DNA of 64,000 nt from Adineta vaga. Lineage: Eukaryota; Animalia; Rotifera. Location of the stretch: the NCBI GenBank assembly GCA_021613535.1, contig CP075497.1, positions 11,966,001 through 12,030,000 on the forward strand, read 5' to 3'. Under the pieces are notes generated by a model that was given only the letters and a program-made list of their open reading frames with translations, made no database searches and was not told the origin of the DNA. A program made the translations under genes and the position numbers. Positions within the stretch are counted from its first letter, which is position 1, and every line of letters starts with the position of its first letter. This document shows, one piece after another, positions 18,902 through 63,006 of this stretch.

Positions 18902-21092
18902 ATGAGTACAACGAATTTTGTTGAATTTGATCAATCAAAATGTGTTGATAAAAAATATGGACATCAACATATTAGTAAATAATTTCTTTAGATTTCTGTA
19001 TTTTATTAACCAATTGATATTTAGTGTCATCATTCACAACTTATCCTATTGAAACAGTTCGAACTGAAGTTTTAAAAACGACAATTAAACCACCAACAAT
19101 TACACCTAAATATGATTCGAATACATCATCAACTGTTGTCGAATGGCATGTAAGTTCTATTTTACTAAAAGAATATTATTTTCAAGATAAGTTTTCCCAG
19201 GGTAAAAAAGACGTTCGAATTGCTCAACGACCTCGACCAATGATTACTGATGATAGCGATGCTATTATACATGTGACATCATCAACAATTTGTGGAAGTG
19301 ATTTACATATGTGTAAGAAATCATAGGTTTAATAAATATTGATTTTTATATATTTTGTATAGATACTGGTGATATGAAAGGCATGCTATCAAAAGATATT
19401 ATTGGTCATGAATGTAAGTTTTTTTTACAGCTTTATTTGTTAGAAGAAAAAAAATTTTATTTTAAAGGTATGGGTATTGTAGAAAGTATAGGTAGTAGTG
19501 TCAAGAATATTAAAGTTGGTGATCGAGTTGTTGTTAGTGCACCAATTGCTTGTGGACAATGTGAATGTAAGTCTTTTTTGTTTTTAATTAATAAAAATAT
19601 CTGAATTGTTTTGTTTATAGATTGCAAAACTGGTATGTTTTCATTATGTGATATTACAAATGATTCGAAAGTTATGGAAACACTCTATGGTCATCGAATT
19701 TGTGGAGCATTTGGTTATTCACATTTAACAGGTCATTGATAAAGAATATGAAGTGTTGAACAATATGTATTATTCCATTTTTTTAGGAGGTTATGATGGA
19801 TGTCAAGCTGAATGGGTTCGTGTCCCATTTGCTGATGTTAATCTATTGAAAATTGAAAATGATCGATTAACTGATGAACAAGTATTATTTCTTAGTGATA
19901 TTGTTTGTACTGGTAAGTTATTTTCCATGATTGATTTATTATTGACTGTGATATTATCGGTAAATATTGTAGCATGGCATGCTAATGTCTTAGGTGGAGT
20001 TGGTCCTGAAACGACTGTAGCTATCTGGTAAGTATTTACATCATTGCCTTTATGATTAATAATAAATGGTATGTAGGGGTGCTGGTCCAGTTGGTTTACT
20101 GACTATTATGTGGGCTAAATATCGAGGTGCAAAGCGTATCTTTTCTATTGATTGTGTTGAGGAACGTCTGGCTAAAGCTCGATCACAAGGTGCAGAAACA
20201 ATCGATTTTTCTAAACATAATGTAGTTGATACTATGCAAAAACTAATACCTGGTTGGAATTTTCTTAAATATTAGATAAAATATGAATTCTATGTTCTTT
20301 GAGTAGGTGGTCCTGATGTATGTGTTGATGCTGTTGGTTTCCGTTATACAAAAGGTTTGATTCATACTGTACAACGTGCTGTCTTTCTCGAAACAGATAC
20401 ACCTGAAATCTTAGCTGAAGCAGTTACTGTTGTTCGAAAAGGTGGAACTGTCGCAATTGTTGGAGATTAGTAAGTCATCAGATCTAATCATCTTTTCATA
20501 TCTCTTGTGTTTCTTTTCTAGCTTTTATAAATCGAATGCATTTCCGATCGGTGAGAGATATAAAAGATGAAGATTATTACATATCAAACTTTCTTTTATT
20601 TTCTAGGTGCTTTCATGGAAAAAGGTGAATACATATAAGTTTAATGATTTTTATATGAAATAATAATGTCTTTAGCTGTAACAATGCGAGGTGGTCAGTT
20701 ATACTGTCAAAGCTATTGGCATGATCTTCTTAAAATTATTGAAAATGGCGTAAATTATTCCTGTTTCTATTATATAAATAGAGAAATTATTTTATTTGGA
20801 TCTATTTTAGGAAGTTGATCCAACATTTATTATTACACATACAATGGATTTATCACAAGGTTCGTCAAAATATATAACTATTTATATCTATTTTTGATTT
20901 TCAATGATAATCTTCTAGCGGCTGAAGCTTATAAAAACTTTAATGACAAGTCAAATGGAACAATGTAAGTGATCGGTTAGATATTCTTTTATTAGGAATT
21001 CGTTATTATTCTATTTTAGCAAAGTAGTATTGAAAACTGCTTTTGCTGCTGTTCAACAGGCTACATCAGGTGTCACCACGAGCACAAAATAA
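18902..21092 (+). CDS. Zinc-dependent alcohol/formaldehyde dehydrogenase (MDR family, microbial glutathione-independent FDH-like), about 16 exons
   Basis: [13 protein letters not shown], structural-Zn [66 protein letters not shown]. About 15 short introns, including an 18-nt exon near 20607-20624. Confidence 0.85.
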
Positions 21093-21267
21093 TCTTTGGA
21101 TATTAAATTCATAACTGAAGATGTATTTTTATTTGTAGTCAAGCTTTTTATATTCTAATATATAAATTATTTTTTCTTGAAAACAGAACAAAAAAGATTT
21201 AGAAATGTTCATATTTATATTATATGAGAAATTAATCTGTATAGATAAATATTTTAATTCACTTCTA

Positions 21268-21360
21268 ACAGGAGTGTCCCGATGGAGGGGGAAGGGGTTT
21301 GGGAGCGCGACGTCCTCCCAATAATCGAAAATTTCGACTTACGCCTCCCCAATTTTTTCA
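21268..21360. mobile_element. Probable DNA-transposon end remnant (hAT-like GC-rich terminus)
   Basis: Isolated GC-rich CAGGAGTGTCCCG...GGGG...CTCCCC segment; a similar style of end (TAGCGGCGGCGCCAGAATTTT) occurs near 22258. No matching partner end found. Confidence 0.3.
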
Positions 21361-21940
21361 AAACTGAGTTCTAATCAATTTCATTTATAAATATATATAT
21401 ATATGTATTTATTTTAAAACTAACTGTACGAAAAATACGTCATGATGAGGACCCTGAATGATTATTACATCAGCAAGATCATATATGTTGGTTAATTGTT
21501 GAGTTGCTATAAGTAAAAGAAGGAATCATTTTAAAATTAAAATAGAAATAAAAAATAAAACTTACAGTTTGGCATTATCAAGTTTTTTTTCGCTGTTAAA
21601 CCAACACTATGCGTATCAACAGTCTAAAAATAAATACTTTTTAATAAATATTTTACAAATTATTCATACAAGAAATATGCAAAGTATTCGTAAAAAAACT
21701 ACCTCAGTCAAAACAGCCATTTTGTTGTCAAACAAGAGCAAGAAACAATAATCTCTACTATGTTCTCCTTTTGAACATACGATGACCGATTGATAATATT
21801 TCTCAACTCGTTTTTTTATTGGTCGAACTATAACTTATTACGAGAAAATGAGTAAATTATTCTTCTTCTATTTTCCTGTTTTCTTTAGTCGTTCTGAGTC
21901 TGAAGAAAACAACGTCGTTGATTGAACTACATATCATTTC

Positions 21941-22137
21941 TAGAGCCATCGGGAGGGGAAAAAGACACAAGATTTCAGAATTTTGATGATACGAAAAACG
22001 TTTTGCTAGAAAATTGTAGAAAAAATAGTTTTCTATTGATCTTTGTTTTTTGTTTTTGAAAATCTTATCGGGTTACGTTTCAACACCTGTTTTGCTGAGA
22101 CCTCCATTGTACTGTGCTTTTTCCCTCGGCGGTTCTA
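21941..22137. mobile_element. Degenerate MITE
   Basis: Imperfect inverted ends TAGAGCCATCGGGAGGGGAAAAAGACACA / TGTGCTTTTTCCCTCGGCGGTTCTA; no clear TSD. Confidence 0.35.
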
Positions 22138-24034
22138 TAAAGTTCTTCTTCCAAAAAAAAATTTCTATTTTGTTCATTACAGTTCTAGTCTTTTTTGTTA
22201 ACACAGAAACGTTTAAATATTGATTAATTGTTAGAACTTAAAAATAAGCTGTGCGATTAGCGGCGGCGCCAGAATTTTCGCTCAGGGTGGGCTAAGCCTA
22301 TCCACAAAAGATTTACATTTACTACGAATAACTAATTCTCATATAAGACAACATATACAAATTTACACAATTTAATTTCAAACTGGATTTGTACTCAATT
22401 GGTCCAAAACTGATTTGTTAATTTGATCATGATGATGAAAAAACGACAATATGCGCTTGTATACATGAATTAATTTTCGATATTGATTGGATAATGATTC
22501 ACAGTCACATGATGATGATGCAACATAATTCTAAACGAAAATTCAATTAACAATTATTGACTTGAAATATTTTCAAGGACGTCATCCATCCTCCATTCTT
22601 TTCGTTTATATACGGCATAGAAGGACCCCCCTATTAGTACTTCGATCAGTGATCGAACAACTTCCATCAGACCTGCAGTTTGTTTGGCATATAGATTTTC
22701 CGAAAGACCCTGGGTATCAAAACAATTTTTGCAGTGCTTAATAGGTCATCTATGAAAAGTTTTATATAAAGTTATTGAAAACAATTTGACGAGTTCTTAA
22801 ACTTTTTTTTTGGTTTCGTTCTTCGCAGTGTCCCAACATAGAGCTTTTCAAAATAAAAATTGGCGCTACGAAGCAATATTTGTTAATTTCGTGAGTAGCA
22901 AAAAAGAAAATTAGATTTAAAAAAAAAACTCAGAATCACTTCTGAATTAAAAGAAAAAACTAGTGAAGATCAACTAATTGGAACTTGTTCTGATAATTCA
23001 TCCAATCGAAGGAAATTTTTTTTATGAGTGATCTTTTCCATCATCTCAATAGTTTTAGTGAGACAAAGCCGTAACAGGATGTTTCCTTTCGTTATAAATC
23101 AGTTTCTGACTAGAAATCCAGCTGTTCTCTTAACATAGAATGAAGATTTCATTATGCTTTAAATACATCCATGGATATAAGAAAAATTTCTTTGCATAAA
23201 TTCATTAAAATGAGAAATAGTGAAGAATATACGGACAAAGTGAATAAGTAAAAAAAAAAGAAATGAAAAACGAAAATACCATTATCTTGTTGTCAAAGAG
23301 CAATCTATCAACACTTTCTTGGAGTGTACCAGAATAGAGTTTGACCAATATTAATAACAATATTATTAGTGCAGCAATGCCGATACAACCCATACTAATA
23401 CCGAATGTAATATGGCAGTGGTCATCTTCATTTGTTAAAACACATTTCTACATAAAAGAAAGAAGAAAATCAATTATTATTGACATGATTTCCAGATAGA
23501 TCTTCTTTGCTCCCTTTTTATTCTCTTTGCTACTATTTTTTCCGTGATTCTTAAGATCTTTAAGGATAGGCGTATTTGAAATCAAAATTGCCTTACGTCG
23601 AGCTAATAGAATGAAATTAGTTTATGAGGGTACGGACCGTGAGCGTGAAAAGTAGAGACTATCGGTATCTACCCTCAAAGATTTCCTTTCCTGATTGAAC
23701 TTTTGTTGAATATCACATGCAACAATATCCTTTCTTAAAACGAACTCTTTTGCAAAACTCAAAAAATTACTAATGAAAAATACATATCTTGAGTGTATAC
23801 TGACACTGATAATCATACACGTCAAACGAAACTCCAATCAATAAATACATTAACGCCATCTTTCTGCATAAACGAACTATTCGCTTTTGTTGAAATCGTC
23901 AGATTTCATTACCTTTCTCGAATAACAAAAACACAATACTGTCAGTAATAGTAAAGCGAATTTCTTTTCATAACAAACAAAATATATTCAATAGCTTGTA
24001 TTCTCAACAAACTTTTGTAGAATTTAAAGCGAAT

Positions 24035-27000
24035 ATGTACACATTTTCAACATTACCGATTGAACTCGTCTATCGAATTTTGGATCATCTGTCTGATTTT
24101 ACACTATTTTGTTCAATGCAAAATGTTTGCCAACGTTTTAATCAAATTCTGAACATTTATCATCGATATCAAGTAAGTTTGCAAAGTGCTTTACCTATTT
24201 TCTCATCTGTTCAAGCACACATGAGCTTCGCAATATCTAATTAAATCAGTTTACTAAAAAAAAAAAAAAATTTCACAATTCCGAAGCAATTTCTACGAGT
24301 GAACCAAATACAACATTGACTCATGCTATTAAAACAACCATTCCTCTCACCTGTTCTTTACTATCTCTGCCCATAAAATATATATCTTACTAAACGTGCA
24401 CTCATGTGCCGCACAAGAACGAAACCGCAGCATTAAAACACTTTTCCCGTTTCAAACAAATGTCTCTATTGCAACTCTTAAACAATTCAACAACTATTTT
24501 TGAAACCCACCCAATAAAACAAAGTGAACTGTTTTATATTGTGCCCCAACACCATACGATCTTTCGCAAACCAAATCTAAAAATAACAATCCAAAACCGT
24601 TCGAAATAAACAAGTATCACTACCTTCAGTACAGTATTCACTCTACTCATCCGACGATTCCAAAATTCACTCAGTAATAATCACACAAGCACCGATTTCT
24701 CTTTTCACTCCATGAACCCAGATCGAACCCTTTCACACACTCCCGCCACACCTCTTGTATAATGCTATATCTAATTGAAAAACCTTACTCTAAAGTTCCG
24801 ATTGATTTACCCACACTCTCGAAATGAATATTCTATATATAGACACTCACCACACTAGATCTCTGGGGCAATCAAATCGGCCATGAAGGAGCACAACATA
24901 TTGGTGATGCCTTGCGAATAAACACAGTAATATTCATTCGCTCTTGTCCTGATTGACACATCCATGCTCTTTGTCTCGTCTATAGACACTCACCACACTA
25001 AATCTTGGGTACAATGAAATCGGCCATGAAGGAGCACAACATATTAGTGATGCCTTGCGAATAAACACAGTAATATTCATTCGCTCTTGTCCTGATTGAC
25101 ACATCCATGCTCTTTGTCTCGTCTATAGACACTCACCACACTAAATCTCCTGAGCAATCAAATCGGCCATGAAGGAGCACAACATATTGGTGATGCCTTG
25201 CGAATAAACACAGTAATATTCATTCGCTCTTGTCCTGATTGACACATCCATGCTCTTTGTCTCGTCTATAGACACTCACCACACTAAATCTTGGGTACAA
25301 TGAAATCGGCCATGAAGGAGCACAACATATTAGTGATGCCTTGCGAATAAACACAGTAATATTCATTCGCTCTTGTCCTGATTGACACATCCATGCTCTT
25401 TGTCTCGTCTATAGACACTCACCACACTAAATCTCCTGAGCAATCAAATCGGCCATGAAGGAGCACAACATATTGGTGATGCCTTGCGAATAAACACAGT
25501 AATATTCATTCGCTCTTGTCCTGATTGACACATCCATGCTCTTTGTCTCGTCTATAGACACTCACCACACTAGATCTCGGGGGCAATGAAATCGGCCATC
25601 AAGGAGCACAACATATTGGTGATGCCTTGCGAATAAACACAGTAATATTCATTCGCTCTTGTCCTAATTGACACATTCATGCTCTCTCTCGTCTTTAGAC
25701 ACTCACCACACTAAATCTCCTGAGCAATCAAATCGGCCATCAAGGAGCACAACATATTGGTGATGCCTTGCGAATAAACACAGTAATATTCATTCGCTCT
25801 TGTCCTGATTGACACATCCATGCTCTTTGTCTCGTCTATAGACACTCACCACACTAAATCTTGGGTACAATGAAATCGGCCATGAAGGAGCACAACATAT
25901 TAGTGATGCCTTGCGAATAAACACAGTAATATTCATTCGCTCTTGTCCTGATTGACACATCCATGCTCTTTGTCTCGTCTATAGACACTCACCACACTAG
26001 ATCTCTGGGAGAATCAAATCGGCCATCAAGGAGCACAACATATTGGTGATGCCTTGCGAATAAACACAGTAATATTCATTCGCTCTTGTCCTGATTGACA
26101 CATCCATGCTCTTTGTCTCGTCTATAGACACTCACCACACTAAATCTCCTGAGCAATCAAATCGGCCATGAAGGAGCACAACATATTGGTGATGCCTTGC
26201 GAATAAACACAGTAATATTCATTCGCTCTTGTCCTGATTGACACATCCATGCTCTTTGTCTCGTCTATAGACACTCACCACACTAGATCTCGGGGGCAAT
26301 GAAATCGGCCATCAAGGAGCACAACATATTGGTGATGCCTTGCGAATAAACACAGTAATATTCATTCGCTCTTGTCCTAATTGACACATTCATGCTCTCT
26401 CTCGTCTTTAGACACTCACAACACTAGATCTCCTGAGCAATCAAATCGGCCATGAAGGAGCACAACATATTGGTGATGCCTTGCGAATAAACACAGTAAT
26501 ATTCATTCGCTCTTGTCCTAATGGACACATCCCTGCTCTCTCTCGTCTATAGACACTCACCACACTAAATCTCCGGAGCAATCAAATCGGTGATCAAGGA
26601 GCACAACATATTGGTGATGCCTTGCGAATAAACACAGTAATATTCATTCGCTCTTGTCCTGATTGACACATCCATGCTCTTTGTCTCGTCTATAGACACT
26701 CACCACACTAAACCTCGGGGGCAATGAAATCGGCCATCAAGGAGCACAACATATTAGTGATGCCTTGCGAATAAACACAGTAATATTCATTCGCTCTTGT
26801 CCTAATGGACACATCCACTCTCTCTCTCGTCTATAGACACTCACCACACTAGATCTCTGGGAGAATCAAATCGGCCATCAAGGAGCACAACATATTGGTG
26901 ATGCCTTGCGAATAAACACAGTAATATTCATTCGCTCTTGTCCTGATTGACACATCCATGCTCTTTGTCTCGTCTATAGACACTCACCACACTAAATCTT

Positions 27001-28061
27001 GGGTACAATGAAATCGGCCATGAAGGAGCACAACATATTAGTGATGCCTTGCGAATAAACACAGTAATATTCATTCGCTCTTGTCCTGATTGACACATCC
27101 ATGCTCTTTGTCTCGTCTATAGACACTCACCACACTAAATCTCCTGAGCAATCAAATCGGCCATGAAGGAGCACAACATATTGGTGATGCCTTGCGAATA
27201 AACACAGTAATATTCATTCGCTCTTGTCCTAATGGACACATCCACTCTCTCTCTCGTCTATAGACACTCACCACACTAGATCTCTGGGAGAATCAAATCG
27301 GCCATCAAGGAGCACAACATATTGGTGATGCCTTGCGAATAAACACAGTAATATTCTTTCGCTCTTGTCCTAATTGACACATCCATGCTCTCTCTCGTCT
27401 ATAGACACTCACCACACTAAATCTTGGGTACAATCAAATCGGCCATGAAGGAGCACAACATATTAGTGATGCCTTGCGAATAAACACAGTAATATTCATT
27501 CGCTCTTGTCCTAATGGACACATCCACTCTCTCTCTCGTCTATAGACACTCACCACACTAGATCTCTGGGAGAATCAAATCGGCCATCAAGGAGCACAAC
27601 ATATTGGTGTTGCCTTGCGAATAAACACAGTAATATTCATTCGCTCTTGTCCTAATGGACACATCCCTGCTCTCTCTCCTCTATAGACACTCACCACACT
27701 AAATCTCCAGAGCAATCAAATCGGCCATGAAGGAGCACAACATATTGGTGATGCCTTGCGAATAAACACAGTAATATTCATTCGCTCTTGTCCTAATTGA
27801 CACATCCATGCTCTCTCTCGTCTTTAGACACTCACCACACTAAATCTCCGGAGCAATCAAATCGGCCATGAAGGAGCACAACATATTGGTGATGCCTTAC
27901 GAACAAACACGGTAATACTCATTCGCTCTTGTCCTACTTGACACATCCATGTTCTCTCTCCTCTATAGACACTCACCACACTAAATCTATTTGGCAATCA
28001 AATCGGCGACCAAGAATGAAAGTATCTCCGAAATACTTTTGGAAATAGGTTGACGTTGTAG
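24035..28061 (+). CDS. F-box protein with 23 exon-encoded ribonuclease-inhibitor-type LRRs (copy 1); in-frame TGA at 28017-28019 in the last exon
   Basis: Exon 1 (24035-24172) MYTFSTLPIELVYRILDHLSDFTLFCSMQNVCQRFNQIL is an F-box. Intron 24173-24842. Then 22 exons of 84 nt (TLTTL[D/N]LxxN[Q/E]IGH[E/Q]GAQHI[G/S]DALRINT) and a terminal exon from 27969. Confidence 0.88.
24843..28019 (+). repeat. Tandem array of 141-143 bp units (84-nt LRR exon plus 57/59-nt intron), 23 copies
   Basis: Exon starts at 24843, 24986, 25129, 25272, 25415, 25558, 25699, 25842, 25985, 26128, 26271, 26412, 26553, 26696, 26837, 26980, 27123, 27264, 27405, 27546, 27687, 27828, 27969. Each is preceded by TAG, and all but the terminal exon are followed by GTAATA. 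Confidence 0.97.
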
Positions 28062-30269
28062 TTTGGACTGTAGGGACATTGTGTTTTAGTGCTCTTTTCT
28101 GAAGAATTTTTTCAGAGTAAACCGATGTGGTGACAAATGAATACACAGTGTGCTTCGAAGTCGTATTTATCGTACAATAACGTGTTTTGTTTTAAGCTCT
28201 TGATTTGCGACCGTGAGAGATGTGTTTATCATCTAAGTTGTTGATTTGTGTATGTCCGAGATAGCGAAATCCCGTGTTAGAAATGCACTATAATTTATTA
28301 GTTGAAGTTTGATGGGTATCATATGATATTTTGTGAAACTGTCTACTCTTAATATAATGTCTTCTGAAAATGTTTCAATAGTGGAAAGGTTATAAAGAAG
28401 AAGGACGACCGTCGATGCGTCTTATGAGCCTTTAAATGGGTCCACTGCACTTATTCCCATCGCTGATCTATTAGGAACGACTGGGAAATTATTTCTTAAA
28501 CATTCTGCTGTGCATGAAAACGTAGCAAATTATTCTTCCGAACTTTATTTTGAATATTTCTCATAATAGAGAGTTTAGTTTAAAGTCTGAGTGCCTCACA
28601 AATCGTTACTATATTTGTAACGTTAGAGAGTTGGGGTTGACGTCAAGATAAAGTGGATGACGAGTTTGACAACTTTATTTAGTTGCTTCTTCGATTTGAC
28701 GTTTGATGTCTAATGATAGAAAGATGTTTTGTATTCGTACATCTCTCAAGATAAAAAAGAAAGTTTTAGAGAAAAGAGTGTATCTCATTCTGAACTAACG
28801 AATGTTTAGAGACACAATTTAGGATATAAATCGCATCTAGATGCAGCTTCCGATATATTCGAGTTTCAATGAAAGACGGCGAAATGCATTTGTAAACACA
28901 AAGAGTGTTTCATGTTTACATAGTGACCCGTACTTATATTCCCTTCCTATTCATTATCATTCTGAGAATTACAAGAGTATGATTAATTCGCGAATGGTAA
29001 AGTCGTTCTGTCTTGAGTTTACACATATTTCTTTTTGAATATATTCATCATCGGTGTCGATGAAACCGACTATACTAGATCTATCGAAGTTTTTCATGCT
29101 GTGCATTCAAATAATTACACATGATAATGAACATTTAGTTGTTGAATGTACATCCAAAATAGTTTCTTTATCTAATATGACGATTTTGTTTATTTGAGAA
29201 ATCAATGTGAACTGCCTTTCTGAATTCATCGATTGTGATGAACATTCTTCTAAAATATACCATCGACGCATGTATCATGACATTTGTTTCATTGAACCAA
29301 TGGCATATTGATCACTGACTTTTAGACTATGAATATATTGATGAAGTATATAATTGTCATATTTACACTAAATGGAAATTTTCTTTCATATAATATTGGT
29401 ATTTTAACAAAGATAGGATTATATCTGACATGAATTAACAAATAATATCTAACATTAGTCGAAAAGAGATAACAAAATTAATGATAAACTTTGTTTGGTT
29501 TGATTTAATCAATTTTGATTGCAATGCTCTAAATATATTTGTAAAAAATATCGAATTCGTATAATAGTTACCTATAACCTTTGAACAATTTCACAGCATC
29601 CAAACAATGAGAATTCAAACGAGTGTTGCATCATAACCAAGATAAAAATGAAGACATTATCAAACGTCATTCGAAAGACGAGCTTGTAAATTTTAAAATA
29701 ATCGATTGTAAACGGATATTATCCATTGTCATAATTAGGTAAATAACTATTGAATCCATACAAAAAATTCAATAAACTCTTTTTCTTTATTTTTTAATAC
29801 TTGATGTTTCCAGATAAAAACTTTCTCTTCCATCAGAAAACATATACATTTTGACCAAAATTATAGAGTATATGATTGTTCGTTCTTTTTTCAATGTTTT
29901 AAATTCTAATGAAAACAAATAATAATGTTGATGTCTTGCGTAGAAGAAGTTTTTCTTTTCTACTTTCATGGCAAAAGAGATAAAAACTTCCATATTTAGA
30001 CTTACGAAATGAGAACAAAATTAAAAATGAACATTTCGTAAATCTCATCTATATTTCTACTCATTTTGTTTCTTATTTATAGACAAGCAGTAATTTATTA
30101 GAGCAACTCTATTTTCATTTAATTATCATAAGTGTTCTAATCTTTTTTGATCATTGTCTTTGAAGGTAATATTTGTTTAAAGCATCATGTGATATATCCT
30201 TTTCATTATCGTCTTTCGATAGATCCCTATTATTCTATTCTTCTATAGAATAATTTTGTCTATTCATTT

Positions 30270-30735
30270 ATTTAATTCTCATTTGATCGTATCTTACGTT
30301 AATATTACGAGAAACTATGTTTTATTTCGGATTCTCTCAACATTAAAAAATCTATTGTGGAACACTTTCATATTATTTTCCTTCGACACAATTTGAGATC
30401 AATTGCCTCTATACTTTCCGAAATATACACAATACATTATGACTTTCTCATATAGCTCAATGGAATATTAACTCGTTGATAATTCAATATATTGTAATCA
30501 ATTGATTTGTTTATTATCGTGTGTTCCATAATTTCGTTATTTATCAGCAAATTTATTACGTCAATATGGTCCTACACAACCAAATTTATATGGCATTATG
30601 TTGATTAATTTGACATATGCATCTTTTAAATTCAAATCCAAAGCAGTTGATATTTTTGAACAATCTTTTATTAATCATTTTCCTTCTATTGAAATTTTAT
30701 TCATCACATCAGATATTAGATGTATAAAAGCCAAC
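30270..30735 (+). pseudogene. Decayed fragment of a lineage-specific LRR-like (F-box-associated) gene
   Basis: LVDNSIYCNQLICLLSCVP*FRYLSANL...LINLTYASFKF...DIFEQSFINHFPSIEILFIT with internal stops. Confidence 0.35.
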
Positions 30736-31346
30736 TCTGAAAATAATAAAAGAGTTTTCCAGAACCTTTTTGGAGGTTCGGCCCACTGGTAAATTTCAGA
30801 ACCCACAAAAGGTTCTGGCTCATAGAGGGTTCTGTTAAAACCTAACAGAATTCTTCATTATTCTATACAAAAATAAGGTTCAGTCTGACATAAAAGGTGT
30901 GTTAAATGGTTTTTCAGAAAATTATTTTCTCTTTATATCTATGTTGATTTGTACACATATTTCAGTGTTGCAAGTGCGTCTGTTTATGTTAAGCTCTCAA
31001 ATAGACCGAAAAAGTGAATTAAGCTACAGTCGAATCACGCTTTTTGCTTGCTGCCGATTGGCTCAATTCAGCCCTAACCTAATTCATTTTCTCAGTCTGT
31101 TTTTGACCTTGTAATATAAACAGACGCACTTGCAGCACTTGGATACGTGTACAAATCAACCTAGATATAAAAAGAAAATCAGTCTACTTATTTTGTTTCT
31201 AATATCCCACTTACCATTTCTCTGCAATATAGATCGGTCTAAATATAAAAGAAGAAAATATTTAGTTTTCTATATAAAATATAAGTCACATTTCGCTAGA
31301 CTTCGATCTGAATTTAAATGAAAATAGAAAATATTTGAGTAGCTGC

Positions 31347-33296
31347 CTAATTCGACTTATAATATAAATGCAGAAACGTACTATCCATACGCACTTATAC
31401 ACTGATAGATATAGATTTAGATTTAGATATATTTATATCTATATACATAGGTACCCATGTAAGTTGTAGGAATAGATTTAGATTTAGTTGAAGGCCTACT
31501 TATATATATGTATTGATGTATATGTATGTACGTAGATATAGGTTAGGATGACTGTAACAACAATCGTAAACTTGTGACTATAGGGTTCAATTGGAGTTTT
31601 TCTTTTCAATTGTCAAATGAATTTCTCTTGCTGAAAGTTTGTTCTGTACACCTACTGTACGAGAACTAAGTTAAAAAGCCTGCATGGATTATTGTGTGCA
31701 TGAAAATAGAGAGTAAAGTGCTTGACTCGAGAAACTATTTCGAGAAAGAGGATGATATCTAAAGTATTGGGTGTAGGTCTGATGCTGGTTGTTAAAGTAT
31801 GTAAATCGTATACGGAAATTTCTCATCCTTATCCTCAGTGTAGACAAAAATAGAGAGTAATGGTGTGCGTTTGTTTCGGTGCGTACACAGTAGTATAATT
31901 TGTGCTGAAGTCTTTTGCAGTAGCATTGTTTTGAAGAGTCATAGTCAGAGGAAACGTTTTGTGAGAATCGAGTGTTGAGGTCAAATTGCGCTATAAAAAG
32001 GAATATATTCCCGTGTACTTATACAGATATGTAGAAAGAACAAATTTCAAAATGCCGAGTTTTCGAGGGTACCGGGTCTTCCGTGCGGCGCCTACTCCTT
32101 TATAGACGGGTTCAAGATTTTAATCAATCAAATTTAGCAAGGAACGCTCGTCGTGCCGATTGAATCAACCCTTGACTGTGGAGCAGATATCTTTCTAGCT
32201 TGTCTCAATAGTAAGACGAATTGATCTATCAGCTTTAAATACGAGAAAACGACTCAAATGTTAATGCTCTGATGTCTTAAATTCCGAAAACAAATTAATC
32301 TATTACTTTGTAAAATAAATTCCACCCAACACCCACAGCCCCACCCATGTACATATCCTCATCTATAGTTTTAGCGAACACCTAGGTATATACTCTCTGA
32401 AGATGATTTCTAACGAGTTTCATTCATTTAATAATCAATATTTTAATGAAGAAAAAATGTACATTTTTCAAACTTGGGAGACTAATTTTTCTCGTAACTA
32501 TAACAATACATTACATCCAGATAGAACCACGCCAAAAGATTGACTTCAGGTTACATCTACAGCCCCTTAGCATCATCGAGCAAGGGTGCTGAAAAAAATA
32601 AAACAGGATCTCATGAGACTAAGCTTCAAGTCGACCAAAGAACATCTCCCATCGCCGAGCAAGGATTTAAAAAATAAAAAAAGATTTGAAAGGAACTAGT
32701 TTAAAACTGGTCAAAGAATGGTTCTCATTGATGAGCAAGGAGTGTTGAAAAATGCAAGACTTGATTGGAACCAGTTTGAAGTCAACAAAAGAATGCTCCT
32801 AATTGTCGAACTTCTATTTTCACCCACGTGTTCTTCTAAAACCGAGCCAGTCACAGTGTACATCATATATATATATATATTTATCACTTCGCTTTGATGA
32901 AACGCATGAAGCTACTATGTGAAGCATTAAACAGTCTTTCAAAGAGCGCTAGCACAAAGCTAGTCCGTTCACAAATTTATAATTTTTATGAAAATTTTGT
33001 GCTTTCTGTTTTGTACATAACTTACATAAAGAGGATTCGTTTATAAATTTTTAATTTATATAAAAAGCTTGTATTTGTTTGTGCAAATGTACAAAGATTT
33101 CTACTTTTATTTTATAAATGAAGTTTTTCATTCAATTGTGCATTTATATTATAATTACAAGTGAGCATCCCATGGAGTATGTATGTATAACTAAATCTAA
33201 ATCTAAATCTAAGTATAAGTATATATATATATATATATCTATTTTATAAGTCATATTTGACTGTTGTAGGTCCATTTATATTATAAGTCGAATTAG
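31347..33296. mobile_element. About 1.95-kb non-coding element bounded by inverted repeats
   Basis: 24-bp perfect inverted repeat CTAATTCGACTTATAATATAAATG (31347-31370) / CATTTATATTATAAGTCGAATTAG (33273-33296); subterminal (TAGATT)n on the left and (AATCTA)n on the right. Confidence 0.6.
32572..32810 (+). repeat. Three degenerate ~75-79 bp tandem repeats
   Basis: Recurring ATY..YGAGCAAGG...AAAAAT...CAAAGAA pattern near 32572, 32651 and 32726. Confidence 0.55.
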
Positions 33297-60230: not shown

Positions 60231-60808
60231 TTCTTTTATTCTTTATTATCTGAGTCATTGCATTATTAGTCATTATTCTTTTTAACAAATCGATTTCTTT
60301 TATATGAAAATTGTGTTTGACAACGAAAAAAATCTTTTTCTTTATGTGCCATGTTGATAATTTTAGTTTTCCTAAGTCATTTGTTTTTTTTCTTATGTGA
60401 CTTCCGGTGCTCATTTATATATATACGTATGTACATGAGAAAAAAAATCTCATCTTTTTTTTCGTCAAATAAGACGACTCAACTTAAGTTGCTGTTGACA
60501 TGATGCTGATTTTATCGTCAATTCTTGTGATGATTGATACAAATACACATAAATAAATTTGTCATTTTTTTCTAGGATCGAAAACGAATAATTGATTATA
60601 TCGAACTAGAATGTTGAGATGGCATAATAAATAAATAAGAATGTTATTTTTTCTTTTTTCGCTTCGTCTTTTTTCTGTGATCTGTTTAATGTGTTTTAAT
60701 CCATGTATGAAAATAACATTTAATAACTAGTAAAATTAAAAATATGGATATTTTTCCCTTTGATATTTTATATTTATTCGATAGTATACTTTTTAGAGTT
60801 GAATCAAT

Positions 60809-61388
60809 ATGTAAAAAGAAAGTTGCGGATCATATCACCAAATGGCTTAAAGATTATCTTGAACCAAGTCATGCAAAAGGTTTTGTTGTTGGTGTGTCTG
60901 GTGGCATTGATTCAGCTCTTGTTTCAACACTATGTGCTCGAACAGGTACTCCAACACTTGTTATTGAAATGCCTATTCATCAATCATCATCTGAGGTACA
61001 ACGAAGTCAAGCACATATCAGTTGGTTAAAATCAAAATTTCCTAATGTTACTGGTGGTACTGTTGATTTAACTGAACCTTTTGAAACCTTTAAAAAAACA
61101 GTTAATGCAAATGAGATTAATGAAACGAATGCTTATAGTGAAGTCGCATTTGCTAATATGAGATCACGTTTAAGAATGGTTAGTATTGTTTAATTGTGAT
61201 ATTGAAAAACAGAGAAGGATCTTTTTTTCTTTCATAGGTTAATTTATATTATTATGCTTCACTCAAAGGTTATCTTGTTGCTGGTACTGGAAATAAAGTA
61301 GAAGATTTTGGTGTTGGTTTCTTTACAAAATATGGTAAGAAAAGAGAAGATTTTCGTAATCTATACGTTTTCTTTAAGGTGACGGTGG
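60809..61388 (+). pseudogene. nadE: Truncated nadE copy
   Basis: The equivalent ATG is immediately followed by TAA. 60817-61388 matches 54126-54697 with four substitutions by my count, then stops at the start of exon 3. Confidence 0.92.
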
Positions 61389-61402
61389 GTGTGGGTGTGG
61401 GT
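61384..61402 (+). repeat. Interstitial telomere-like tract GGTGGG(TGTGGG)2T at the nadE truncation point
   Basis: Source reads GACGGTGG|TGTTGATA; copy reads GACGGTGG|GTGTGGGTGTGGGTATG. Confidence 0.7.
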
Positions 61403-61719: not shown

Positions 61720-63006
61720 ATGTACACATTTACAACATTACCTATCGAACTCGTCTACCGCATTTTGGATCATCTAACTGATTTTACACTATTTTATTCA
61801 ATGCAAAATGTTTCCGAAGGTTTTAATCAAATTCTTAATATTTATCATCGATATCAAGTAAGTTTCCCCAGTCCTTTACCTATTTTTCCGTCTTTTCAAA
61901 TACATACGAGTTTACTCGAAGAAAAAACAAATTTCACGATTCCGAAGCAACTTTCACGTGTGAATCAACCACAACATTTCCTCACACCTGTTCATTTCTA
62001 TCCATGTCCATAGGATATACATCTTATTCCACCTACACTCAAGTGCCGAACAGAAATCAAACTGCACAATTATAAAACAGCTTTCCCATTTCAAACATAG
62101 CTCTATTGCAACTCCTCAACAAATGCAACAACTATCTGTGAAACCCACCGAATAAAATCAAATCAACTCTTTTATATTGTACCACGACTCAATACTAACC
62201 TTCGCAAACTAACTATCAAAATACCAATCCAAAACCTTTCTAAATAAACAAGTATCATTACCTTGAGTACAGTAGTCCCCTCTCCGTCCGACAATTCGAA
62301 CATTAACTCAGTAATAAACAGTCAAGCAATAACTTTTCTTTTCGCCCAAAGAATCCAAACCAAACACTATCTGAACTCTTTCACACACCACCAAGCATCT
62401 TGTATAATGCTATATCTCGGTGAAAGATGTTAATCTAAATTTCGATTGCCTTACGCACATTTTCGAAATAAACATTCTATACATAGACACTCACCACGCT
62501 AAATCTCTGGGACAATCGAATCGGCGAACAAGGAGCACAACATATCGGTGATGCCTTGCGAAGAAACACAGTAATATCCATTCTCTCCACATACAATTGA
62601 CAGACCCATGCTCTCTCTCTCTCGTTTATAGACACTCACCACACTAGATCTCTGGAACAATCGAATCGGCGAACAAGGAGCACAACATATCGGTGATGCC
62701 TTGCGAATAAACACAGTAATATCCATTCTCTCTATATCTAATTGACAGATCCATGCTCTGTCTCGTCTATAGACACTCACCACACTAAATCTGAGGGATA
62801 ATCAAATCGCCCATCAAGGAGCACAACATATCGGTGATGCCTTGCGAACAAACACAGTAATATCCATTCTCTCTACATACAATTGACAGACCCATGCTCT
62901 CTCTCGTCTATAGACACTCACCACGCTTAATCTCGAGTGCAATCGAATCGGCAAACAAGGAGCAGAATATCTTCGAAATATTTTAGGAAACAGGGTGATA
63001 TTCTAG
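61720..63006 (+). CDS. F-box protein with 4 exon-encoded LRRs (copy 2, paralog of 24035-28061)
   Basis: Exon 1 at 61720-61857 (MYTFTTLPIELVYRILDHLTDF...); LRR exons at 62487, 62632 and 62773; terminal exon 62914-63006 (TLTTLNLECNRIGKQGAEYLRNILGNRVIF*). Confidence 0.88.

What the first reader, a model, noticed from the sequence alone, without database searches (positions are those of the whole stretch)
24035..28061. F-box gene with a 23-module exon-per-LRR array and a hypervariable di-residue pattern: candidate programmable recognition/ubiquitination system
Seen: after one F-box exon come 22 full 84-nt phase-0 LRR exons plus a terminal one, with nearly identical scaffold codons and introns. 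Amino-acid change is concentrated in LxxL[D/N]L[x][x]N[Q/E]. The di-residues run WG, GY, LS, GY, LS, GG, LS, GY, WE, LS, GG, LS, RS, GG, WE, GY, LS, WE, GY, WE, QS, RS, FG, with minor H[E/Q] and G/S toggles and almost no synonymous change elsewhere. Established: these x positions form the concave ligand-binding face of ribonuclease-inhibitor-type LRR solenoids, and F-box proteins recruit substrates to SCF E3 ligases. Inference: a modular receptor whose binding surface is rewritten by shuffling, gain or loss of interchangeable exon cassettes, reminiscent of TALE RVDs or lamprey VLR cassettes. It could plausibly target pathogen or transposon proteins for degradation in an animal with little or no meiotic recombination.
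Basis: partly seen in the sequence, partly recalled or inferred. Interest (0 to 1): 0.92.

Follow-up and report, generated by a model that had tools for sequence, protein, structure and literature searches.

The report
Diversifying F-box LRR receptor gene family
This is a real, spliced rotifer gene that joins a ubiquitin-ligase docking module (F-box) to 23 near-identical leucine-rich repeats, one per exon. It is one of at least 40 copies of a gene family whose likely binding loop evolves unusually fast, but nothing suggests a programmable code.

Summary
A 46-codon F-box exon (24035-24172) is followed by a 670-nt intron, 22 full 84-nt phase-0 LRR exons with 57/59-nt GT..AG introns, and a short terminal exon.

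It is not a single locus. The genome (Adineta vaga) has at least 40 F-box exons that are 90% or more identical. The 22 arrays I read hold 3-24 modules, all with open internal exons. A. ricciae and A. steineri keep the same architecture.

Variation is concentrated at LRR positions 8, 9 and 11, and less so at 6 and 14. These lie in or next to the strand-to-helix loop of an RI/NLR-type solenoid. Nonsynonymous diversity there is 3-6 times that of introns and fourfold sites, while the scaffold is under purifying selection. RNA contigs show exon-exon junctions at the predicted borders.

Arrays grow by local cassette duplication. I found no evidence for a TALE-like code, VLR-like assembly or somatic shuffling.

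New here: each gene sits in a multicopy unit of at least 9.5 kb with one sharply defined end and unrelated flanks, so it was probably mobilised. The window copy is a truncated unit.

First-stage notes of this scan describe the same kind of array on other pieces of this genome.

Verdict: a lineage-specific, diversifying family of probable SCF substrate receptors, a new variant of a known kind.

The parts
23548..24034 (+). Upstream part of the shared repeat unit (promoter and 5' UTR region). Homology to the paralogous units begins here (23517-23548); the first ~1.37 kb of the full unit is missing in this copy.
   Evidence: homology boundary; the missing part is nowhere else in the window; 94.6% mean identity between paralogues. 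An RNA contig covers 24011-24172.
24035..24172 (+). Exon 1: ATG plus a 46-codon F-box, ending in phase 0 before a GTAAGT donor.
   Evidence: Pfam F-box-like 1.1e-5, F-box 1.7e-5, both above cut-off. (near-identical exon at all 22 arrays). (at least 40 copies in the genome at 90% identity or more).
24173..24842 (+). Intron 1, 670 nt, GT..AG. Its length is conserved at 662-670 nt in most paralogues and is 702-753 nt in other Adineta species.
   Evidence: The donor at 24172/24173 is used in RNA contigs. It is the least conserved segment between paralogues, at 90.2%.
24843..27968 (+). 22 cassettes of 141 or 143 bp, each an 84-nt phase-0 exon for one 28-residue RI-type LRR plus a 57- or 59-nt intron. 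Hypervariable codons are 8, 9 and 11 of each exon.
   Evidence: LRR_6 matches. Exon-exon junctions in RNA contigs at 24986, 25557/8, 26553 and 26636.
27969..28019 (+). Terminal exon: 16 codons (a partial 23rd LRR) plus TGA. The stop is premature relative to the 30-residue terminal exon of most paralogues.
   Evidence: Four of the 22 arrays have a stop at residue 14-16 of this exon.
28020..31336 (+). Conserved downstream part of the repeat unit, apparently non-coding. Homology to the paralogous units stops sharply at 31336, so the unit is truncated here.
   Evidence: 92-97% identity to other copies, which run on further. (no ORF of 80 aa or more)..
61720..63006 (+). A second, more divergent family member in the same window. 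F-box exon 61720-61857, intron 1 of 629 nt, LRR exons at 62487, 62632 and 62773, terminal exon 62914-63006. Four modules with different variable residues (WD WN RD EC).
   Evidence: 78-81% identity to the main subfamily.

Best explanation
The locus is one member of a lineage-specific (Adineta, probably wider among bdelloids) multigene family. Its proteins are an N-terminal F-box spliced directly onto a solenoid of ribonuclease-inhibitor/NLR-type 28-residue LRRs. By analogy with other F-box proteins, the F-box would dock on SKP1-CUL1 and the LRR surface would select the protein to be ubiquitinated. Each LRR is its own phase-0 exon within a 141-143-bp exon-plus-intron cassette. Unequal exchange or replication slippage can therefore add, delete or recombine repeats without breaking the reading frame. 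Diversifying selection acts on positions 8, 9 and 11 (and less on 6 and 14), in and around the strand-to-helix loop, while the scaffold is kept by purifying selection. The genes were spread around the genome, mostly to distal chromosome arms, as cargo of a unit of at least 9.5 kb with one fixed end. The result is a germline-encoded repertoire of differing recognition surfaces. Its most likely targets are fast-changing proteins such as those of pathogens or selfish elements. Shown: gene structure, family, pattern of variation, RI-type fold in a relative, splicing, and the unit with its discrete end. Inferred: SKP1 binding, ubiquitination, the kind of target, and the mobilisation mechanism.
For: Structure and splice sites are intact in the window and in 263 of 263 internal exons of 22 arrays. 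The F-box passes Pfam cut-offs. LRR_6 matches single exons of the window weakly and relatives at 112-121 bits. AlphaFold of an A. ricciae relative gives pLDDT 81-97 over the LRRs, with the strand at repeat positions 4-6 and the helix at 13-26, so positions 8, 9 and 11 sit in the strand-to-helix loop. The best PDB matches are NLRP3, NOD2 and ribonuclease inhibitor, TM 0.7-0.78. Entropy over 263 units is 2.58, 2.95 and 2.24 bits at positions 8, 9 and 11, and mostly below 1 elsewhere. The same positions lead in A. ricciae and A. steineri. Within arrays, pN at codons 8, 9 and 11 is 0.40 against a scaffold pS of 0.10, and scaffold omega is 0.43. First and second codon positions there have diversity 0.35-0.70, against 0.15 at fourfold sites. 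A unit's nearest scaffold relative lies in its own array 57% of the time against 5.5% expected, and array sizes are 3-24. RNA contigs carry exon-exon junctions, and the exon 1 donor is joined to an LRR acceptor. Spliced gene models exist in A. ricciae and A. steineri. The shared unit has one sharp end and unrelated flanks in 16 copies; the end motif occurs 130 times in the genome against 0 for the control. 29 of 40 copies lie within 3.5 Mb of a chromosome end (p = 8e-5).
Against: No test of SKP1 binding, ubiquitination or any substrate was possible. The F-box part of the model has low confidence (pLDDT 41-49). The expression evidence comes from short contigs of runs only guessed to be RNA, and it cannot be assigned to this copy rather than to paralogues. 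This copy has a premature stop in its last exon and sits in a truncated unit, so it could be on its way to decay. The dN/dS figures come from non-independent, recombining repeats and are descriptive, not a formal site test. I read 22 arrays, not the whole family.
Confidence: 0.6

Rival explanations
1. The F-box-LRR gene works for the mobile unit that carries it, not for the host. One possibility is that it directs host silencing or restriction factors to the proteasome, as some viral F-box proteins do. The hypervariable surface would then track changing host targets.
For: Every copy read lies inside the same unit with a discrete end and unrelated flanks. The linkage of that end to the gene is also seen in A. 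ricciae. The rest of the unit has no recognisable coding capacity, so the F-box gene is its only evident gene.
Against: No transposase or reverse transcriptase lies in the part of the unit that I could read, so the unit is at best non-autonomous. Mobilisation of ordinary intron-bearing host genes, including one LRR gene, is already described in this species (PMC3846280). Truncated units such as the window copy still keep an open gene.
Confidence: 0.1
2. Diversity is generated beyond the germline. Combinatorial skipping of the symmetrical phase-0 exons, or somatic recombination between cassettes, would yield many receptor isoforms per gene, in the manner of Dscam or VLR.
For: All 22 internal exons are phase 0 and of equal length, so any subset keeps the frame. 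One RNA contig joins the exon 1 donor (24172) to the acceptor of unit 20 (27546) with GT..AG ends. Some DNA contigs skip one or two units.
Against: That joint rests on 29 nt in one contig and could come from a paralogue or the other haplotype. Short-read contigs collapse repeats, so the DNA 'skips' are expected artefacts. The gene is complete and ordinary in the germline. No flanking silent cassettes were seen.
Confidence: 0.07
3. The family has an endogenous or no selected recognition role. The variable positions would simply be the least constrained exposed residues of a recently amplified repeat, in a gene family drifting after TE-mediated amplification.
For: Copies are young, with about 10% neutral divergence. 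Four of 22 have a premature stop in the last exon. Many units are exact duplicates.
Against: Relaxed constraint cannot push nonsynonymous diversity 3-6 times above intron and fourfold-site diversity. Third positions of the same codons stay conserved. Residues at positions 8 and 9 are biased to G, R, E, W and to Y, N, D, G, S. The same positions vary in three species. All 263 internal exons are open.
Confidence: 0.15
4. The array is an assembly artefact or a dead satellite-like repeat.
For: High-identity tandem repeats are prone to mis-assembly. Short-read contigs of DNA runs break inside the array.
Against: At least 22 independent loci have the same architecture and different content. Two other species' assemblies show it as well. 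Reading frames and splice sites are perfectly kept, and spliced RNA contigs exist.
Confidence: 0.03

Closest known systems
Expanded F-box (and MATH-BTB) ubiquitin-ligase adaptor families of Caenorhabditis and plants
   Same: Large lineage-specific families with a conserved cullin-docking module and a positively selected substrate-binding part. They cluster on chromosome arms and are proposed to target foreign or selfish proteins (PMC8120010, and the Thomas 2006 work it cites; PMC12951971).
   Different: The nematode families use FTH/FBA or HTH domains, not an RI-type LRR solenoid. They have no one-exon-per-repeat cassette arrays. Here the number of repeats itself varies from 3 to 24.
Ribonuclease inhibitor and NLR (NLRP3, NOD2, fish NLR-C) LRR domains
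   Same: 28-residue LRR_6 repeats with the same fold. From my own knowledge, not tested here: these genes also have a modular exon structure, with in-frame LRR exons that duplicate and can be skipped, and ligand contacts in RI come largely from the strand-to-helix loops.
   Different: RI and NLR exons encode two repeats (about 57 residues) rather than one. NLRs carry a NACHT domain, whereas here an F-box is spliced directly to the LRRs.
Vertebrate/yeast FBXL proteins (SKP2, FBXL2, Grr1) and plant TIR1/COI1
   Same: F-box followed by an LRR solenoid that binds the substrate.
   Different: To my knowledge FBXL repeats are the shorter cysteine-containing LRR type. Pfam records only a faint LRR_FBXL15 hit for the relative, and LRR_6 is the best match. 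FBXLs are conserved single-copy regulators, not a diversifying family.
Lamprey VLR and TALE repeat arrays
   Same: Tandem repeats with variation focused on a few surface positions; VLRs are also LRRs.
   Different: VLRs are assembled somatically from silent cassettes into an incomplete germline gene, and TALE RVDs read DNA one base per repeat. Here the gene is complete in the germline, the cassettes are ordinary exons, and no code or nucleic-acid binding is indicated.
Penelope pLTR-mediated mobilisation of intron-containing host genes in A. vaga (PMC3846280)
   Same: Same species, with intron-retaining copies of multigene-family members, one of them an LRR gene. The terminal repeat module is about 180-220 bp with a palindrome at its end. 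Our unit starts with a hairpin-containing module of about 180 nt that other loci share.
   Different: I could not read the other end of the unit, find target-site duplications or compare with a Penelope pLTR. The four GIY-YIG matches in the genome are not near the listed unit ends. The paper describes single events, not a family of 20 or more copies on one unit.

Membership tests
F-box proteins (Pfam PF00646 / PF12937) | An F-box motif of about 40-50 residues recognisable by profile | tested here: met
   Exon 1 scores 25.5 bits (cut-off 24.3) and 24.9 bits (cut-off 20.5). The second copy in the window is weaker (14-15 bits, below cut-off).
F-box proteins (Pfam PF00646 / PF12937) | Binding to SKP1 and assembly into an SCF ligase | not testable with these tools
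   No A. vaga SKP1 sequence could be handed to complex prediction.
RI-type (RNI-like) LRR proteins, Pfam LRR_6 | 28-29-residue repeats matching LRR_6 | tested here: met
   Single exons score 16-24 bits. Multi-repeat relatives score 112-121 bits against a cut-off of 23.4.
RI-type (RNI-like) LRR proteins, Pfam LRR_6 | Alpha/beta horseshoe with one short strand and one helix per repeat | tested here: met
   Tested on the A. ricciae relative P0162:1-216, not on the window protein. pLDDT is 81-97 over the LRRs. The best PDB matches are NLRP3, NOD2, RI and NLRP1 LRR, at TM 0.7-0.78 and rmsd about 2 A.
FBXL subfamily (cysteine-containing LRR type) | The FBXL-type LRR repeat profile | tested here: inconclusive
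   The repeat is 28 residues and its best match is LRR_6. For the relative P0151, LRR_FBXL15 is only 'faint' in the precomputed Pfam hits.
NLR (NACHT-LRR) receptors | NACHT/NB-ARC nucleotide-binding domain upstream of the LRRs | tested here: not met
   The F-box exon is spliced directly to the first LRR exon in all 22 arrays and in relatives' gene models. There is no other ORF of 80 aa or more in 20000-33000 apart from a short one at 19753-20031.
VLR-type somatically assembled receptors | An incomplete germline gene completed from flanking silent LRR cassettes | tested here: not met
   The germline gene is complete, with start, canonical GT..AG introns and stop. The flanks hold no further cassettes.
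TALE-like repeat code | 33-35-residue helical repeats with a two-residue determinant reading one base each | tested here: not met
   The repeat is a 28-residue LRR. Three to five positions vary. Nucleic-acid binding could not be tested.
pLTR-mobilised host genes (Penelope, PMC3846280) | Introns retained in the dispersed copies | tested here: met
   All copies keep intron 1 and every cassette intron.
pLTR-mobilised host genes (Penelope, PMC3846280) | Flanking pLTRs and target-site duplication | not testable with these tools
   One end is discrete, and its first 120-180 nt are shared with other loci. The other end lies outside the DNA I could fetch. Only one inverted pair of ends was seen, at C5:15670253/15679952.

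The most novel reading that the evidence does not exclude
The family is a mobile, self-diversifying degradation-receptor system. In this reading, a retro-mobilised unit of about 10 kb, copied from an antisense template so that introns survive, seeds new F-box-LRR genes near chromosome ends. Each array then rewrites its binding surface by cassette exchange, and possibly by exon skipping. That would give a largely asexual animal a fast-evolving intracellular immune repertoire against fungal, viral or transposon proteins.
Probability: 0.15. Interest if true: 0.85.

Novelty: new variant of a known kind. Interest (0 to 1): 0.6.

Why it matters
Bdelloid rotifers have persisted with little or no conventional sex, so how they keep up with coevolving enemies is an open question. 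A family of dozens of ubiquitin-ligase receptors with fast-evolving recognition loops and variable repeat number would be a concrete candidate for germline-encoded intracellular immunity. Its spread with a mobile unit adds to that interest. It also offers a natural example of LRR binders that differ almost only at three loop positions. I found only generic annotation of these genes ('F-box domain-containing protein', 'leucine rich repeat containing protein') and general remarks on LRR family expansion in A. vaga.

Tried and rejected
1. Exons were searched one by one by reference, and the structure was predicted on a database relative instead.

2. Reading the far end of the repeat unit failed. 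The class of the unit (Penelope-like, LINE-like, DNA transposon) therefore stays open.

3. A terminal-inverted-repeat model was rejected as general. No inverted copy of the end motif occurs in any fetched locus. None with 2 or fewer mismatches lies at the expected distance on contig C1. Only one inverted pair was seen, on C5.

4. The search for GIY-YIG endonuclease near the unit ends gave 4 hits, none nearby. This is inconclusive, not negative.

5. There were no Rfam families in two full loci and no Pfam hit for the longest ORFs of the unit outside the gene.

6. Intron 1 is not conserved in sequence between Adineta species; only its length is. No hidden exon is suggested.

7. Literature searches for the family returned nothing specific.

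8. SKP1 docking by complex prediction was not attempted for lack of an admissible SKP1 sequence.

9. The 46-residue F-box query against the representative library mostly returned short exon-sized gene calls. It was useful only for reaching the Adineta gene models.
Full report
**1. What is in the sequence**

Tandem Repeats Finder reports one array at 24838-28007 with period 143, 22.3 copies and 92% matches. Parsing it gives 22 full 84-nt exons starting at 24843, 24986 ... 27828. Each is preceded by AG and followed by GT, with introns of 57 or 59 nt.

Each exon translates to one 28-residue repeat of the form TLTTL[D/N]Lxx N[Q/E]IGH[E/Q]GAQHI[G/S]DALRINT.

Upstream, an ATG at 24035 opens a 46-codon exon that ends in phase 0 before GTAAGT at 24173. 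This exon passes the Pfam cut-offs for F-box-like and F-box. A 670-nt intron separates it from the first LRR exon.

The terminal exon starts at 27969 and stops at a TGA at 28017-28019 after 16 residues. Single LRR exons match LRR_6.

Exons were handled one by one by reference.

**2. Is the variation really focused?**

Within this array, nucleotide diversity is 0.44 at codons 8-9, 0.038 in the rest of the exon and 0.069 in the introns. These figures are recomputed from the columns, whose printed codon labels are one too low. Five of 6 sites vary in codons 8-9 against 13 of 78 elsewhere (p = 0.0014).

The array has 13 exon classes, 8 intron classes and 15 unit classes. It contains an exact 301-nt two-unit duplicate. 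The same exon class occurs with different introns, so units are recent duplicates and recombinants.

**3. It is a family, not a locus**

The window is C6:11966001-12030000 of a 100.8-Mb, six-contig assembly. One database protein places this assembly in Adineta vaga.

A two-unit query finds more than 265 matches on all contigs. The F-box exon finds 40 scored copies at 90-100% identity, out of 66 candidates. Of those 40, 29 lie within 3.5 Mb of a contig end (p = 8e-5), and only one is on C3.

I fetched 20 further loci and read 22 arrays in all:
- They have 3 to 24 modules.
- All 263 internal exons are open, with AG and GT intact.
- All have the near-identical F-box exon, a GTAAGT donor (GTAAGC in one) and an intron 1 of mostly 662-670 nt.
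- The terminal exon is 30 residues in most arrays; 4 of 22, including this one, stop at residue 14-16.

A second, more divergent member with 4 modules lies at 61720-63006 of the window.

In A. ricciae (two tandem genes, 141-bp period) and A. steineri (142-bp period) the architecture is the same. Their public gene models splice the F-box directly to the LRRs. F-box-LRR relatives are also annotated in Rotaria.

**4. Pattern of evolution**

Over the 263 units, entropy is 2.58, 2.95 and 2.24 bits at positions 8, 9 and 11. It is 1.4 at positions 6 and 14, and mostly below 1 elsewhere. The same positions lead in the other two species.

Within arrays, the nonsynonymous difference at codons 8, 9 and 11 is 0.40, against 0.10 synonymous in the scaffold. 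Scaffold omega is 0.43.

At those three codons, first and second positions have diversity 0.35-0.70, while their third positions (0.08-0.33) and scaffold fourfold sites (mean 0.15) stay low. Residue usage is biased to G, R, E, W, Q at position 8 and to Y, N, D, G, S at position 9.

Between paralogues, identity by segment is as follows:

| Segment | Mean identity |
|---|---|
| F-box exon | 96.5% |
| Upstream 480 nt | 94.6% |
| Downstream 1.5 kb | 92.4% |
| Intron 1 | 90.2% |

A unit's nearest scaffold relative is in its own array 57% of the time, against 5.5% by chance. Each array uses a small set of its own types: there are 88 tri-residue types in all, and 32 are shared between arrays.

Together these results indicate local cassette duplication and exchange, purifying selection on the scaffold and diversifying selection on a few positions. 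The figures come from non-independent, recombining repeats and are descriptive only.

**5. Structure**

An AlphaFold model of the A. ricciae relative P0162:1-216, built with a 9-sequence alignment, has pLDDT 81-97 over the LRRs. There is one strand at repeat positions 4-6 and one helix at 13-26 per repeat.

This places position 6 in the strand, positions 8, 9 and 11 in the strand-to-helix loop, and position 14 just inside the start of the helix.

Foldseek's best PDB matches are NLRP3, NOD2, ribonuclease inhibitor and NLRP1 LRR, at TM 0.7-0.78. The F-box part is poorly modelled (pLDDT 41-49).

**6. Expression**

No listed run that holds the stretch is on record as RNA; the RNA label is a guess. 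In three such runs of the same organism, contigs carry exon-exon junctions at the predicted borders. Exon-end letters stand directly before 24986, 25557/8 and 26553, and exon-start letters directly behind 26636.

One contig covers 24011-24172 with one difference that is also seen in DNA. One joint links 24172 to 27546 with GT..AG ends.

This shows that family members are transcribed and spliced as predicted. It does not prove expression of this copy. The single long-range joint (29 nt on one side) may be exon skipping, a paralogue or the other haplotype.

**7. The larger unit**

Homology between this locus and the paralogous loci runs from 23548 (23517 in three copies) to 31336 and stops sharply there. 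The other copies continue to match each other on both sides. The missing parts are not elsewhere in the window, so this copy is truncated.

In 16 copies the unit begins 1.86 kb upstream of the ATG, at the same nucleotide. The start is a 5-nt T-rich stretch and then a small hairpin (CCCTTT..AAAGGG), and the upstream flanks are entirely unrelated.

The 27-nt end motif occurs 65 times forward and 65 times reverse in the genome, against 0 for the control. Its first 120-180 nt are shared with other loci that lack the rest of the unit. The same end lies 3.2 kb upstream of an F-box gene in A. ricciae.

Downstream, the unit runs at least 4.4 kb beyond the array. That stretch has no ORF with a Pfam match and no Rfam family. 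Some copies end earlier at different points. I could not read the far end.

A discrete common end with unrelated flanks points to mobilisation rather than ordinary segmental duplication. A. vaga Penelope elements are reported to mobilise intron-bearing host genes between roughly 180-220-bp pLTRs with a terminal palindrome, including one LRR gene. An antisense template was proposed there to explain intron retention (PMC3846280).

Read antisense, our fixed end would be a 3' end with a hairpin and a short A-rich tail, which fits that idea. This reading is untested. The GIY-YIG matches are few and not near the listed unit ends.

**8. Comparison and verdict**

The family works like the expanded, positively selected F-box adaptor families of nematodes and plants (PMC8120010, PMC12951971). 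Its LRRs are of the RI/NLR type.

It is not an NLR, because it has no NACHT domain. It is not VLR-like, because the germline gene is complete. It is not TALE-like, because the fold differs and three to five positions vary.

Existing annotation is only generic. LRR family expansion in A. vaga has been noted in general terms (PMC3846280). I found no description of the three features set out here: the one-exon-per-LRR cassette arrays, the variability at positions 8, 9 and 11, or the carrier unit.

First-stage notes of this scan describe the same kind of array on other pieces of this genome.

I rate it a new variant of a known kind, of moderate to high interest. The 'programmable' reading is not supported.

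Noticed in passing
window 60744-61401: An intron-bearing NAD synthase-like gene (Pfam NAD_synthase 6e-15, profile positions 3-110 of 242) breaks off right after the codons for KYGDGG. At that point it runs into a (TGTGGG)3 telomere-like repeat at 61384-61401 (0.04 expected by chance). About 85 nt further on, the second F-box-LRR unit begins. This looks like a broken gene healed by telomere addition, with the unit appended distally.
   Followed up: partly
window 28020-31336 (and L044, L039, L049 downstream parts): More than 3 kb downstream of the gene is 92-97% conserved between copies, better than intron 1. It has no ORF of 80 aa or more and no Pfam or Rfam match. Its role is unknown; it may be a cis element of the carrier unit or a non-coding transcript.
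   Followed up: partly
L044:1-142 (minus strand), L042:9306-9901, L039 and L033 tails: The distal part of the unit holds a run of short imperfect palindromes of the form AGAACC-N5-6-GGTTC, about 20-40 nt apart. They look like repeated protein-binding sites or subterminal repeats.
   Followed up: no
window 24172 -> 27546: One RNA contig (run X17) joins the F-box exon donor to the acceptor of LRR unit 20 with GT..AG ends, supported by 29 nt on one side. It could be skipping of 19 exons, a paralogue or the other haplotype.
   Followed up: no
window 24431-24814: Contigs of a presumed RNA run (X18) lie inside intron 1 at about 94-96% identity and low depth. Possible causes are intron retention, paralogue pre-mRNA or DNA carry-over.
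   Followed up: no
L045 (C4:14587000-14596900), left flank of the unit: The public A. vaga gene model UJR34376.1 (P0003) fuses an exon of the flanking host gene (...YQEEFREQL) to the F-box exon, across the first 1.86 kb of the unit. The unit therefore lies in or right next to another gene, and the annotation is chimeric.
   Followed up: partly
L044:7430-7735 (minus strand): Just outside the unit's fixed end there is an open frame with an unrelated F-box-like motif (LPEHVLYNLCKYLS...).
   Followed up: no
genome-wide: Only 1 of the 40 scored F-box exons lies on C3, which I calculate to be the largest contig (about 20.4 Mb). The other five contigs carry 7-9 each.
   Followed up: no
L036 (C5:14703000-14712900): Two direct copies of the unit's terminal module lie 938 bp apart, upstream of one F-box gene. 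This resembles a solo terminal repeat plus a full unit.
   Followed up: no
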